A stretch of 62,942 nt of DNA, filler included, from Octopus bimaculoides (taxonomy: Eukaryota): assembly GCF_001194135.2 (NCBI RefSeq). It is 5 parts of 5 records of this genome, joined end to end, with 100 filler letters (N's around TTAATTAATTAA, not from the genome) between each part and the next. Parts side by side here need not be neighbours in the genome. Positions count along the whole stretch, not along the records: positions 1 to 25,596 come from NC_068984.1; 4 more parts are not named here. One strand, 5' to 3'. Below are positions 3,617-10,173 of this stretch, one piece after another. The notes under the pieces are model-generated. The model ran no database searches and had not been told where the DNA came from. It was given only the letters and a program-made list of their open reading frames with translations. Position numbers and translations under genes: made by a program. Within the stretch, counting starts at the first letter, position 1. Each line of letters begins with the position of its first letter.

Positions 3617-3975
3617 GTGGTACTTCGTCGGTTACGACTACGAGGGTTCCAGTTGATCCGATCAACAGAACAGCCTGCTCGTGAAATTAACGTGCAAATG
3701 GCTGAGCACTCCACAGACATGTGTACCCTTAACGTAGTTCTCGAGGGGATTCAATGTGACACAGAGTGTAACAAGGCTGGCCCTTTGAATTACAGGCACA
3801 ACAGAAACAGGAAAAAAGAGTGAGAGAAAGTTGAGAGGAAAGAGTACAGCAGGGTTGGCCCCCACCTCCTGCCAGAGCCTCGTGAAGTTTTAGGTGTTTC
3901 CCGGTCTGGGAATTGAAACCGCGATCCTACGACCGCGAGTCCGCTGCCCTAACCACTGGGCCTTTGCACCTCCAC
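3617..3975 (-). mobile_element. tRNA-derived SINE group C variant, full length
   Basis: Reverse head GGAGGTGCAAAGGCCCAGTGGTTAGGGCAGCGGACTCGCGGTCG..GTTTCAATTCCC. The 3-prime ~190 nt are homologous to the copy at 37752-38077. Confidence 0.85.
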
Positions 3976-4454
3976 ACACACACACACACACNNNNNNNNN
4001 NNNNNNNNNNNNNNNNNNNNNNNNNNNNNNNNNNNNNNNNNNNNNNNNNNNNNNNNNNNNNNNNNNNNNNNNNNNNNNNNNNNNNNNNNNNNNNNNNNNN
4101 NNNNNNNNNNNNNNNNNNNNNNNNNNNNNNNNNNNNNNNNNNNNNNNNNNNNNNNNNNNNNNNNNNNNNNNNNNNNNNNNNNNNNNNNNNNNNNNNNNNN
4201 NNNNNNNNNNNNNNNNNNNNNNNNNNNNNNNNNNNNNNNNNNNNNNNNNNNNNNNNNNNNNNNNNNNNNNNNNNNNNNNNNNNNNNNNNNNNNNNNNNNN
4301 NNNNNNNNNNNNNNNNNNNNNNNNNNNNNNNNNNNNNNNNNNNNNNNNNNNNNNNNNNNNNNNNNNNNNNNNNNNNNNNNNNNNNNNNNNNNNNNNNNNN
4401 NNNNNNNNNNNNNNNNNNNNNNNNNNNNNNNNNNNNNNNNNNNNNNNNNNNNNN

Positions 4455-4779
4455 CAGTTTGTTACATATCCCAATGCCCCAACAATCACGGGTATGAATC
4501 TGAACTTGTAGTCTGGGTGGAGTATCTGCAAATTTCTTAGTAGCTCGGCGTAGTTGTTCTCTTTTTCTCTAATCTTTAGTGGAATGTTGACATCCGCAGG
4601 ACAGCTGATTTCTACTACTGTACAGAGTTTCTCTTCTCTGTCCCAGATTACTATATCCGGTCTATTATGTCTGCACTTTATTGAGGTTTATATTGGGATA
4701 TTCCACCAATACTCTTTCATATTGTGAGTGGTAATGGCCTCTACCTCATTATGGGTTTTCATCTCCTTAGCCCCGGGGT
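4455..4779 (-). pseudogene. RLE (R4-clade-like) non-LTR retrotransposon fragment, restriction-like endonuclease domain, family 2 copy 1
   Basis: Manual translation KEYWWNIPI*TSIKCRHNRPDIVIWDREEKLCTVVEISCPADVNIPLKIREKENNYAELLRNLQILHPDYKFRFIPVIVGALGYV. Contains the RPD..E..K PD-(D/E)xK motif and the IVGALG motif, with one stop. Confidence 0.9.
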
Positions 4780-4843
4780 TATGTATGTATGTATGTATGT
4801 ATGTATGTATGTATGTATGCATGTATGTAAGTATGTATGTATG
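4780..4843. repeat. (ATGT)n / (ATAC)n microsatellite
   Basis: Direct reading. Separates the RLE fragments. Confidence 0.95.
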
Positions 4844-4958
4844 AATATCATTATTCAGTTTTATTTTAAAATTTCTTGCCAATAGAGAAAGAGCCAGTTT
4901 CTAACCTAGAGCCAAGGCCCCTTCATTGGAATTTCAACATCAACAACAGGGTATTTTT
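4844..4958 (-). mobile_element. probable 3-prime UTR terminus of an RLE retrotransposon, tailed by (ATAC)n
   Basis: The reverse strand ends AAATAAAACTGAATAATGAT followed by (ACAT)n. This resembles the 3-prime end of the Dong-like copy at 61675-61700, and it is in the same orientation as the flanking RLE fragments. Confidence 0.55.
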
Positions 4959-4988
4959 GTATGCATACATGTATGTATGTATGTATGT

Positions 4989-5356
4989 TCCGGTTTTGAG
5001 AATCCTAATTTCTCAAAATTGGTATCCCAGGGACCCAACAATTACAAGCATAAACCTGAACTTGTAACCTGGATAGAGTAACTGCAGATTTCTGAATAAT
5101 TCAGCGTAGGTATTCTTTTCCACTGATCTTCAGCTTTATGTTAACATCTGCTGGACAGCAAATTTCCACAACTATACACAGTTTCTCTTCTCTATCCTAA
5201 ATCATTATATCAGGTCTGTTGTGCTTACATTTTACTGAGGTCTTCACTGGGACATTCCACCAGTATTCCTGAGTGGCTATGGCTTCTACCATATTGTGGG
5301 TTCTTATTTCTTTGTCCTCGGCGTTATTCTTCCGACGGATTCCATTATAGTGTCAC
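4989..5356 (-). pseudogene. RLE non-LTR retrotransposon fragment, family 2 copy 2
   Basis: Translation HYNGIRRKNNAEDKEIRTHNMVEAIATQEYWWNVPVKTSVKCKHNRPDIMI*DREEKLCIVVEICCPADVNIKLK/YAELFRNLQLLYPGYKFRFMLVIVGSLGY/NFEKLGFSKP. A paralogue of 4455-4779 with a stop, a frameshift and deletions. Confidence 0.9.
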
Positions 5357-5404
5357 ATATGTACGTATGTATGTATGTATGTATGTATGTATGTATGTAT
5401 GTAT
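5357..5404. repeat. (ATGT)n microsatellite
   Basis: Direct reading. 5-prime flank of RLE copy 2. Confidence 0.95.
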
Positions 5405-10111: not shown

Positions 10112-10173
10112 GGATTCATGTACACTTAACTGGCTTATCTCCCTTGGTTCTTGCTTTTGCAAAGTGCCATTCT

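What the first reader, a model, noticed from the sequence alone, without database searches (positions are those of the whole stretch)
4455..5404. Head-to-tail RLE retrotransposon array embedded in (ATAC)n: candidate new microsatellite target specificity
Seen, on the minus strand in order: (ACAT)n, RLE fragment (5356-4989), (ACAT)n, a 3-prime-UTR-like terminus (4958-4844), (ACAT)n, and a second paralogous RLE fragment (4779-4455). Every boundary is the same tetranucleotide in the same polarity. The protein (EYWWN, HNRPDI, EISCPADVNI, IVGALG) is clearly a different family from the AAT-associated Dong-like copies in this window. Established: R4-clade RLE elements are often sequence-specific (R4 for 28S rDNA, Dong for TAA repeats), and target-specific elements pile up in tandem in their target. 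Inference: this family recognises (ATAC)n/(GTAT)n, a specificity I do not know to be described, and could be a main generator of the abundant TATG repeats. Caveat: copy 2 is also cut at its 3-prime side by the repeat, which simple target-primed insertion does not explain.
Basis: partly seen in the sequence, partly recalled or inferred. Interest (0 to 1): 0.75.

Follow-up and report, generated by a model that had tools for sequence, protein, structure and literature searches.

The report
Retrotransposon that inserts into ACAT microsatellites
Two dead copies of an R2-like retrotransposon sit head to tail inside an (ACAT)n microsatellite, and intact relatives found elsewhere are bounded on both sides by the same repeat in the same polarity, so this lineage very probably inserts specifically into (ACAT)n, a target I found described only for an unrelated insect element.

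Summary
On the minus strand, two 5'-truncated pseudogene fragments of a restriction-like-endonuclease (RLE) domain from a non-LTR retrotransposon lie in one (ACAT)n tract, same polarity.

Two corrections:
- Fragment 4779-4455 ends at an assembly gap (N 3992-4454), not at the repeat.
- The short middle repeat plus the 115-bp "terminus" belong to fragment 5357-4989. An Octopus vulgaris copy carries the same ORF end, imperfect (ACAT)n and 115-bp module. So there are two elements, not three pieces.

- Four of four readable 5' junctions of octopus copies with a detectable 5' flank repeat abut (ACAT)n in sense polarity.
- Four full-length relatives (about 4-4.5 kb, two families, 1083-1208-aa ORFs) carry (ACAT)n at both ends.
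- A scan selected only by protein motif found 14 of 23 contigs reaching a repeat at an element end. All were in sense: 6 (ACAT)n, 8 (ACTT)n.

A full-length relative folds like R2 (Foldseek E 1e-35) and has no APE domain.

Not established: R4/Dong clade membership, since no reference sequences were available, and any role as generator of TATG repeats. (ACAY)n targeting is already known for the APE-type Waldo; microsatellite-specific RLE elements are known (Dong, Togen, some HERO). Verdict: a new member of a known kind, of moderate interest.

The parts
5358..5404 (-). (ACAT)12 microsatellite, 5' flank of copy 1 (upstream remainder of the target array)
   Evidence: Further upstream on the minus strand is unique sequence, not an element terminus.
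4989..5357 (-). Copy 1: 5'-truncated ORF fragment (C-terminal RLE domain pseudogene, ...EYWWNVPVKTSVKCKHNRPDIMI*DREEKLCIVVEICCPADVNIKLK...LGFSKPE)
   Evidence: Translations. tblastn to P0001 and the family composite at 72-76% identity. One stop, one frameshift, one small deletion.
4959..4988 (-). Short imperfect (ACAT)n inside the 3' UTR of copy 1. About 130 bp of ORF end and proximal UTR are missing next to it.
   Evidence: L001 3' UTR positions 110-251 align to window 4989-4848 at 88%, including this repeat. L001 sequence.
4844..4958 (-). 115-bp terminal 3' UTR module of copy 1 (...GGTTAGAAACTGG...CTGAATAATGATATT)
   Evidence: 91% identical to L001:3470-3578. Alignable with the 3' UTR that follows the stop codon directly in the O. 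vulgaris subfamily copy L006.
4780..4843 (-). (ACAT)16 microsatellite: 3' flank of copy 1 and 5' flank of copy 2
4455..4779 (-). Copy 2: 5'-truncated ORF fragment (RLE domain pseudogene, ...EYWWNIPI*TSIKCRHNRPDIVIWDREEKLCTVVEISCPADVNI...VIVGALGYVTN), cut off by the assembly gap
   Evidence: Translation. Homologues at E down to 2e-45. tblastn at 77% to the family composite.
3992..4454 (.). Assembly gap (463 N) that hides the 3' part of copy 2
   Evidence: The missing ORF end plus UTR (about 380 bp by comparison with L001) would fit in it. That fit is an inference.

Best explanation
The locus holds two old, dead, 5'-truncated copies of an R2-like non-LTR retrotransposon. The element has a single ORF with a central reverse transcriptase and a C-terminal CCHC knuckle plus PD-(D/E)xK restriction-like endonuclease, and no APE domain. 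Its lineage inserts sequence-specifically and in one polarity into (ACAT)n.(ATGT)n microsatellites. By analogy with R2, the likely mechanism is as follows (inferred). The ORF protein binds its own 3' UTR RNA and the repeat DNA. The RLE nicks the (ATGT)n strand. The freed 3'-OH primes reverse transcription from the RNA 3' end (target-primed reverse transcription). Synthesis often stops early, giving 5'-truncated copies whose 5' end is joined to the upstream part of the same array. Because the target is polar, successive insertions into one array lie head to tail, as they do here. In the octopus subfamily of copy 1, an imperfect (ACAT)n lies inside the 3' UTR. It is probably a captured piece of target from read-through into a downstream truncated copy (inferred). 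Shown here: domain content, R2-like fold of a full-length relative, base-precise junctions with (ACAT)n on both sides, single polarity, and the relationship of the window copies to those relatives. Inferred: the nicked strand, the order of steps, and which protein domain reads the repeat. The candidate reader is an N-terminal three-helix, Myb/SANT-like domain.
For: Window anatomy.

Octopus copies. L001 has 5' flank (CCAT)n(ACAT)2.5. L006, a different subfamily, has 5' flank (CCAT)5(ACAT)21 with element homology starting right after it. In both loci and in the window, the sequence upstream of the array is not an element terminus.

Full-length relatives with (ACAT)n at both ends in sense polarity: L007 and L008, L010 and L011.

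The junctions are conserved to the base across independent assemblies. The 5' junction reads (ACAT)n|..GCGCAG..GGACGTGTGGATTAYCGCTCT. The 3' junctions read ..GAGAACGA|ACAT and ..ATGAGAAGTGATAT|ACAT. The window copy ends ..CTGAATAATGATATTCAT|ACAT.

A scan chosen only by protein motifs gave 21 loci. With L007 and L008, 14 of 23 contigs reach a repeat at an element end, all in sense: 6 (ACAT)n and 8 (ACTT)n.

Contigs of one protein cluster are all 3.94-4.13 kb in eight independent assemblies, so assembly always breaks at the flanking repeat.

L012 holds the 3' end of one family, then (ACTT)19, then the 5' end of a different family, head to tail.

In a neighbour-joining tree of the RLE domain, the window copies fall in an octopus group next to the (ACAT)n-flanked metagenome group.

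Architecture: RVT_1 only, no APE; CCHC and RHD motifs. An AlphaFold model of P0213 (pLDDT 83.6) matches R2Tg, R2Bm and R2Pm at E 1e-35 to 1e-29.
Against: Only one of three readable octopus 3' junctions is a clean (ACAT)n array (window copy 1). L001 is followed by a single ACAT then (AT)3, and L006 by (AT)45.

Two related copies lack a 5' repeat. L005 abuts zinc-finger coding sequence. L030 has a unique 5' flank and only degenerate ACAY-rich sequence at its 3' side.

The joint clade of octopus copies and (ACAT)n-flanked relatives has only 48% bootstrap support on a 175-aa domain.

The host organisms of the full-length relatives are unknown.

The full-length contigs are short-read assemblies that collapse many copies. 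No biochemical evidence exists. The window copies themselves are pseudogenes.
Confidence: 0.85

Rival explanations
1. (ACAT)n is not a target but the element's own 3' tail, made by reverse-transcriptase slippage or carried in the RNA as in many LINEs. On this view the arrays upstream of copies are tails of preceding copies in tandem arrays.
For: The octopus subfamily carries an (ACAT)n inside its 3' UTR. A tandem array of element plus tail would also assemble as repeat-element-repeat. 3' flanks in octopus are less consistent than 5' flanks.
Against: The arrays 5' of the window copy 1, L001 and L006 are preceded by unique sequence or by (CCAT)n, not by an element terminus. Full-length 5' ends abut the repeat at a conserved base. 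Two different families share one array head to tail (L012). One 3' array runs on into (TGAC)n(GACG)n, a compound genomic microsatellite (L015). L006 has no repeat between its stop codon and its 3' module.
Confidence: 0.07
2. Passive association: the element inserts without sequence specificity, and copies merely survive or accumulate in microsatellite-rich, low-recombination DNA. This was proposed for Waldo-A and Waldo-B near CA repeats in Drosophila. Alternatively the adjacency is chance in a very repeat-rich genome.
For: The window is extremely rich in simple repeats (76 TRF rows). L005 and L030 are not in a clean array.
Against: The junctions are base-precise, in one polarity, on both sides, with one motif per lineage (ACAT or ACTT), and recur across unrelated assemblies. 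The background density of correctly oriented arrays is about 4e-5 per bp.
Confidence: 0.04
3. The head-to-tail arrangement in this window is partly an assembly artefact: a draft scaffold mis-joined at microsatellites.
For: Six N gaps lie in 25.6 kb, one of them directly next to copy 2. Repeats are where short-read assemblies fail.
Against: The two copies, the terminus and three arrays lie in one uninterrupted stretch (4455-5404). The copies differ by about 20%, so they are not a collapsed duplicate. The same kind of arrangement occurs in L012. This rival would not change what the elements are.
Confidence: 0.04

Closest known systems
Dong (R4 clade, Bombyx mori; DongAg, DongBg)
   Same: An RLE-type single-ORF non-LTR retrotransposon that inserts specifically into a microsatellite, (TAA)n (PMC3812793, PMC4640811). 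'Dong-R4' is the label given to abundant and recently active LINEs in octopus genomes (PMC13282606, PMC8967140, PMC10294476).
   Different: The target here is the tetranucleotide (ACAT)n. No HDV-like 5' ribozyme was detected, whereas Dong and R4 have one (PMC3774820). Clade membership by RT phylogeny was not tested.
Waldo (R1 clade: WaldoAg1, WaldoAg2, WaldoFs1)
   Same: Its target is (ACAY)n microsatellites, essentially the same repeat (PMC3812793, citing Kojima and Fujiwara 2003).
   Different: Waldo uses an N-terminal APE endonuclease and belongs to the R1 clade of insects. The present elements have no APE and carry a C-terminal RLE. If both target this repeat, that would be convergence.
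R2 (28S rDNA-specific; R2Bm, R2Tg structures 8gh6, 9dou, 9nl3)
   Same: Overall architecture and fold: N-terminal DNA-binding region, RT, linker, CCHC knuckle, RLE. Site-specific target-primed reverse transcription is the model mechanism.
   Different: The target is a microsatellite, not 28S rDNA. No C2H2 zinc finger was found in the N-terminus. Sequence identity is only 15-19%.
Togen (NeSL-related, fish) and microsatellite-specific HERO families
   Same: RLE elements with microsatellite targets: (TG)n for Togen, and unspecified repeats for some HERO families (PMC4640811).
   Different: The repeat motif differs. The phylogenetic relation to the present lineage was not tested.

Membership tests
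RLE-encoding non-LTR retrotransposons (R2 group) | Single ORF with central reverse transcriptase and no APE endonuclease | tested here: met
   Full-length relatives P0039, P0145, P0029 and P0040 match RVT_1 only, with no Exo_endo_phos. P0213 and P0217 are 1133- and 1083-aa ORFs. The window copies are 5'-truncated and retain only the C-terminal domain.
RLE-encoding non-LTR retrotransposons (R2 group) | C-terminal CCHC knuckle followed by a PD-(D/E)xK restriction-like endonuclease | tested here: met
   CRLC..ED..H....C and RHD lie upstream of HN(R/K)PD ... E.SCP.D.N ... K..EK in relatives. The window copies keep HNRPDI, VVEISCPADVNI and the downstream K/EK. Pfam has no model that hits this domain.
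RLE-encoding non-LTR retrotransposons (R2 group) | Fold like solved R2 proteins | tested here: met
   The AlphaFold model of P0213 has pLDDT 83.6. Foldseek gives R2Tg 9nl3 at E 1.2e-35 and 9dou at E 1.4e-33 (target TM 0.71), R2Bm 8gh6 at 9e-32, and LINE-1 ORF2p only at 1e-21. phmmer of P0039 hits R2 chains at 1e-24.
Target-specific non-LTR retrotransposon | The same sequence flanks both ends of full-length and truncated copies, in one polarity, at conserved junctions | tested here: met
   L007, L008, L010 and L011 are flanked at both ends. L024 and L026 show the 3' end. The window copies, L001 and L006 show the 5' end. None is antisense. Exceptions are the L005 and L030 5' flanks and the L001 and L006 3' flanks.
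R4 clade (R4, Dong, Rex6) | RT-domain phylogeny groups it with R4, Dong or Rex6 references | not testable with these tools
   No reference sequences for R4, Dong, Rex6, HERO or NeSL could be obtained. The protein libraries carry no such names.
R4 clade (R4, Dong, Rex6) | HDV-like self-cleaving ribozyme at the 5' end (reported for R4 and Dong, PMC3774820) | tested here: inconclusive
   An Rfam E-value scan of L007 and L008 found no ribozyme; the only hits were mir-297, which are microsatellite artefacts. A loose HDV-like descriptor found no candidate shared between families. The 5' 45 nt are conserved and contain a hairpin with three covarying pairs, but from only two independent sequences.
R4 clade (R4, Dong, Rex6) | Known targets: 28S rDNA (R4) or (TAA)n (Dong) | tested here: not met
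   The flanks are (ACAT)n, or (ACTT)n in sister lineages.
Waldo / R1 clade | N-terminal APE-type endonuclease | tested here: not met
   No APE domain was found by Pfam or by fold. An RLE lies at the C-terminus.
R2 clade proper | N-terminal C2H2 zinc finger(s) plus Myb; insertion in 28S rDNA | tested here: not met
   No C2H2 pattern occurs in P0213 or P0217, and the target is not rDNA. An N-terminal three-helix domain is present (pLDDT 82). Its best low-rmsd matches are Myb/SANT domains, but at E >= 1, so Myb status is inconclusive.

The most novel reading that the evidence does not exclude
A previously undescribed clade of R2-like RLE retrotransposons reads tetranucleotide microsatellites with strand polarity and has switched naturally between (ACAT)n and (ACTT)n. 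Its (ACAT)n specificity would be convergent with the APE-type Waldo elements, and cephalopod 'Dong-R4' LINEs, reported as active in octopus, would include such microsatellite-homing elements.
Probability: 0.45. Interest if true: 0.65.

Novelty: new member of a known kind. Interest (0 to 1): 0.5.

Why it matters
Target-specific RLE retrotransposons are the natural models for site-directed, break-free DNA insertion, and R2 is being engineered for that purpose. A set of close relatives that differ in a 4-bp repeat target, (ACAT)n versus (ACTT)n, is a natural experiment. It could show which protein region sets target choice.

For cephalopod genomics, this explains one class of LINE/microsatellite associations. 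It warns that repeat annotation and assembly will break exactly at these elements. It also shows that some 'Dong-R4'-type octopus LINEs may be confined to a harmless niche rather than scattered through genes.

The finding does not show that the element creates the microsatellites.

Tried and rejected
- Pfam on the window peptides found nothing significant.
- I looked for translated microsatellite at the N-termini of 148 representative homologues as a cheap junction survey. None was found, but this is uninformative because gene callers start at Met.
- L003 and L004, about 50% identical relatives from unknown hosts, have no (ACAT)n near them. They belong to other branches.
- Rfam and a hand-written descriptor for a 5' HDV-like ribozyme were negative.
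- A consensus 3' UTR structure across octopus and metagenome elements could not be built; the sequences are not alignable.
- Host identification through cluster members gave no names.
- P0057 (O. bimaculoides) is not on record for a locus look-up.
- L031 and L032 contigs stop short of the flanks.
- Literature searches for an RLE element with an ACAT target found none. Repbase Reports, Dfam and Kojima and Fujiwara 2004 are not in the library.
- I considered and rejected the reading that the 115-bp unit is an independent SINE. It occurs only directly behind family copies in 63.6 kb of non-N octopus sequence, and it aligns with the contiguous 3' UTR of L006.
Full report
**1. What is in the window**

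Read on the minus strand, 5404-4455 contains the following:
- (ACAT)12 at 5404-5358.
- A reading-frame fragment at 5357-4989.
- A short imperfect (ACAT)n at 4988-4959.
- A 115-bp non-coding unit at 4958-4844.
- (ACAT)16 at 4843-4780.
- A second reading-frame fragment at 4779-4455.

The two fragments encode the same about 110-residue stretch: EYWWN, HNRPDI, E(I)(S/C)CPADVNI, IVG(A/S)LG.
- Copy 2 has one stop codon.
- Copy 1 has a stop, a frameshift and a small deletion.
- They are about 78-80% identical in DNA, so they are old, separately diverged copies.

TRF confirms the arrays.

Fragment 4779-4455 does not end at a repeat. It runs into a 463-N assembly gap (3992-4454). Beyond the gap come (GT)n and a tRNA-like SINE.

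**2. What the fragments are**

Pfam has no model for the peptide. Homologues are numerous: 4581 representatives at E<=0.001.

The full-length homologues are 1083-1139-aa single ORFs with a central RVT_1 domain and no APE domain. Their C-terminus reads CRLCxxxxEDxxHxxxxC ... RHD ... HN(R/K)PD ... ExSCPxDxN ... K..EK. That is the CCHC knuckle plus PD-(D/E)xK restriction-like endonuclease (RLE) of R2-type elements.
- P0039 matches solved R2 proteins by sequence (E 1e-24).
- An AlphaFold model of P0213 (pLDDT 83.6, pTM 0.73) matches R2Tg, R2Bm and R2Pm over nearly its whole length (E 1e-35 to 1e-29).
- That match is well ahead of the one to LINE-1 ORF2p.

The fragments are therefore the 3' parts of 5'-truncated RLE-type non-LTR retrotransposons.

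The nearest named proteins are from Octopus vulgaris and O. bimaculoides. The window is therefore probably octopus DNA. In octopus genomes, 'Dong-R4', 'Hero' and 'R2' LINEs are reported, the first being abundant and recently active (PMC13282606, PMC8967140, PMC10294476).

**3. The middle repeat and the 'terminus' belong to copy 1**

An O. vulgaris copy (L001, chromosome OX597824.1) has this order:
- The ORF running to its stop codon.
- About 40 bp.
- An imperfect (ACAT)n.
- The same 115-bp module (91% identical).

A copy of another octopus subfamily (L006) has a homologous module directly after its stop codon, with no repeat in between. The module is therefore genuine LINE 3' UTR, not a separate SINE.

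Copy 1 in the window has lost about 130 bp, the last about 30 codons and the proximal UTR, next to that internal repeat. The locus is two elements head to tail, not three pieces.

The end of the proximal UTR in L001 (GATATGAGAAT|ACAT) resembles the true 3' terminus of relatives L008 and L010 (ATGAGAAGTGATAT|ACAT). The internal repeat may therefore be captured target, from read-through into a downstream truncated copy. This is inference.

**4. Is (ACAT)n the target? Octopus copies**

5' junctions, on the element's sense strand:
- Window copy 1: (ACAT)12.
- Window copy 2: (ACAT)16.
- L001: (CCAT)n(ACAT)2.5.
- L006: (CCAT)5(ACAT)21, with RT homology beginning right after it.

In each case the DNA upstream of the array is unique sequence or a different repeat, not the tail of another copy.

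3' junctions are less uniform:
- Window copy 1: (ACAT)16.
- L001: one ACAT then (AT)3.
- L006: (AT)45.

Two copies are exceptions at the 5' side:
- L005 abuts C2H2 zinc-finger coding sequence.
- L030, from an unknown host, has a unique 5' flank and only degenerate ACAY-rich DNA after its stop codon.

The background density of perfect (ACAT)>=4 arrays away from these elements is about 5 in 63.6 kb. Four correctly oriented 5' junctions are therefore far beyond chance.

**5. Full-length relatives settle it**

Four full-length elements have (ACAT)n at both contig ends, in sense polarity:
- L007, 3993 bp, 1133-aa ORF, from ENA.
- L011, 4125 bp, from JGI, the same family as L007.
- L008, 4510 bp, from ENA.
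- L010, 4541 bp, from JGI, a second family shared with L008.

The junctions are conserved to the base:
- 5' junction: (ACAT)n|..GCGCAG...GGACGTGTGGATTAYCGCTCT.
- 3' junctions: ...GAGAACGA|ACAT or ...GAGAAGTGATAT|ACAT.

L024 and L026 show the same 3' junction.

The eight contigs of the P0213 protein cluster, from independent ENA, Logan and JGI assemblies, are all 3.94-4.13 kb. That is what one expects if every copy is bounded by a repeat the assembler cannot cross.

The loci L009-L029 were chosen only by two protein motifs, so the flank survey is unbiased. With L007 and L008, 14 of 23 contigs reach a simple repeat at an element end:
- All 14 are in the sense orientation.
- Only two motifs occur: (ACAT)n in 6 and (ACTT)n in 8.
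- The remaining 9 contigs stop inside the element.

**6. Target, not tail**

Four observations are hard to reconcile with (ACAT)n being merely a self-made 3' tail or with tandem duplication:
- L012 carries the 3' end of an L020-type element, then (ACTT)19, then the complete 5' end of a different family. Two families sit head to tail in one array, the same anatomy as in the window.
- L015's 3' array continues into (TGAC)n(GACG)n, a compound genomic microsatellite.
- The O. vulgaris 5' arrays are compound (CCAT)n(ACAT)n.
- L010 has a partial duplication of the first 7 nt at its 5' junction, typical 5'-junction noise of target-primed reverse transcription.

**7. Relationship of the window copies to those relatives**

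I built a neighbour-joining tree of the about 175-aa RLE domain, with 200 bootstrap replicates.

| Group | Members | Bootstrap |
|---|---|---|
| Octopus group | Both window copies, L001, L005, L006, L002 | 65% |
| (ACAT)n-flanked metagenome group | L007/L011, L008/L010, L024 | 86% |
| The two groups together | All of the above | 48% |

(ACTT)n-flanked elements fall in two other places in the tree, and L026, which is (ACAT)n-flanked, falls in a distant branch. Target motif is thus largely lineage-specific but has changed more than once. The tree is short and only moderately supported. The octopus junction data stand on their own.

**8. How it probably works**

Shown here:
- R2-like architecture and fold.
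- Precise two-sided junctions.
- A single polarity.

Inferred from the R2 model (8gh6, 9dou and the literature cited in PMC13580325):
- The protein binds its 3' UTR RNA and the repeat DNA.
- The RLE nicks the (ATGT)n strand, and the nick primes cDNA synthesis.
- Incomplete synthesis gives the 5' truncations seen in every octopus copy.

The polarity of the target forces successive insertions into one array to be head to tail.

Possible functional RNA and protein parts in the relatives:
- A conserved 5' terminal about 45 nt. It contains a hairpin that covaries between the two families, but that is only two independent sequences.
- A 3' UTR hairpin CCUUG-CURUA-loop-UAYAG-CCGG. It shows a compensatory G-C/A-U change and three different loops in L007, L008/L010/L024 and L031 (read by eye).
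- An N-terminal three-helix domain (residues 22-78 of P0213, pLDDT about 80). Its best low-rmsd matches are Myb/SANT domains, but without statistical significance.

No C2H2 finger is present. No HDV-like ribozyme was found at the 5' end, although R2, R4 and Dong have one (PMC3774820).

**9. Comparison with what is known**

- RLE elements are mostly target-specific. Microsatellite targets are described for Dong, (TAA)n; Togen, (TG)n; and some HERO families (PMC4640811, PMC3812793).
- (ACAY)n is the described target of Waldo, an APE-type R1-clade element of insects (PMC3812793). The repeat is therefore not a new target for retrotransposons, but the enzyme type here is different.
- I found no paper describing an RLE element with an (ACAT)n or (ACTT)n target.
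- Repbase Reports, Dfam and the Fell et al. inventory mentioned in PMC13580325 could not be searched.
- Whether the lineage belongs to R4/Dong, HERO or neither was not testable, because no reference sequences were available.

**10. What is not supported**

The suggestion that the family is a main generator of the TATG repeats has no support here:
- The other (ACAT)n arrays of the window, at five loci, have no element fragment beside them.
- An element that needs an existing array can split arrays. In the octopus subfamily it can also carry a short internal one along. It does not seed arrays at new sites.

**11. Verdict**

- The main interpretation, (ACAT)n target specificity of an RLE retrotransposon, is supported with confidence of about 0.85.
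- Clade assignment to R4 is open.
- Novelty: a new member of a known kind, possibly already present in Repbase.
- Interest is moderate. It rests mainly on the natural (ACAT)n/(ACTT)n specificity pair in an R2-like scaffold.

Noticed in passing
L012:300-480; L013-L016, L019-L021: Sister lineages of the same RLE clade are flanked by (ACTT)n in sense polarity. In L012 the 3' end of one family and the full 5' end of another share a single (ACTT)19 array head to tail.
   Followed up: partly
L005:9700-9960 (O. bimaculoides CM046628.1): A copy of the family begins inside C2H2 zinc-finger linker codons (cgtattcacaca|aatacacaag). Intact neighbouring units read cgtATACATACAgga, so the HTGEKP-linker coding sequence mimics 2.25 units of the (ACAT)n target. 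This may be an off-target insertion into an expanded gene family. Speculative.
   Followed up: no
L006:17607-18258 (O. vulgaris OX597815.1): (TTA)72 is followed about 230 bp later by an RT fragment of a different LINE in the same orientation.
   Followed up: no
window 3700-3991 (minus strand): Directly beyond the assembly gap lie (GT)n and a tRNA-like SINE (ggttagggcagcggactcgcggtcgtaggatcgcggtttcaattccc).
   Followed up: no
window 10173-10769 and 11427-11859: A 15-bp minisatellite (TCCGCTCTACGCTCT) is present at about 40 and 29 copies on either side of an assembly gap (10770-11420).
   Followed up: no
window 14572-14675: A perfect 16-bp tandem repeat, CGACCAAAGCCTTGGG, x5, with a palindromic core.
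   Followed up: no
L007:3880-3905, L008:4385-4410, L024, L031:2845-2869: A conserved 3' UTR hairpin, CCTTG-CTRTA-loop-TAYAG-CCGG, lies about 50 nt before the 3' end. It has a compensatory G-C/A-U change and three different loops. It is a candidate RNA element recognised by the reverse transcriptase.
   Followed up: partly
L007:48-95, L008:76-125, L032:1-45: A conserved 5'-terminal motif, GCGCAG...GGACGTGTKGATTRYCGCTCTGC, is shared by three families. No known ribozyme matches it.
   Followed up: partly
L001:3079-3150 and L006:8904-9009: Both O. vulgaris insertions sit at the (ACAT)n end of compound (CCAT)n(ACAT)n microsatellites. Their 3' flanks are AT-rich rather than ACAT.
   Followed up: partly
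L004:8704-9259 and L003:6792-6868: More distant relatives are preceded by (AT)278 and (GCTG)n respectively. These may be further target specificities in the clade.
   Followed up: no
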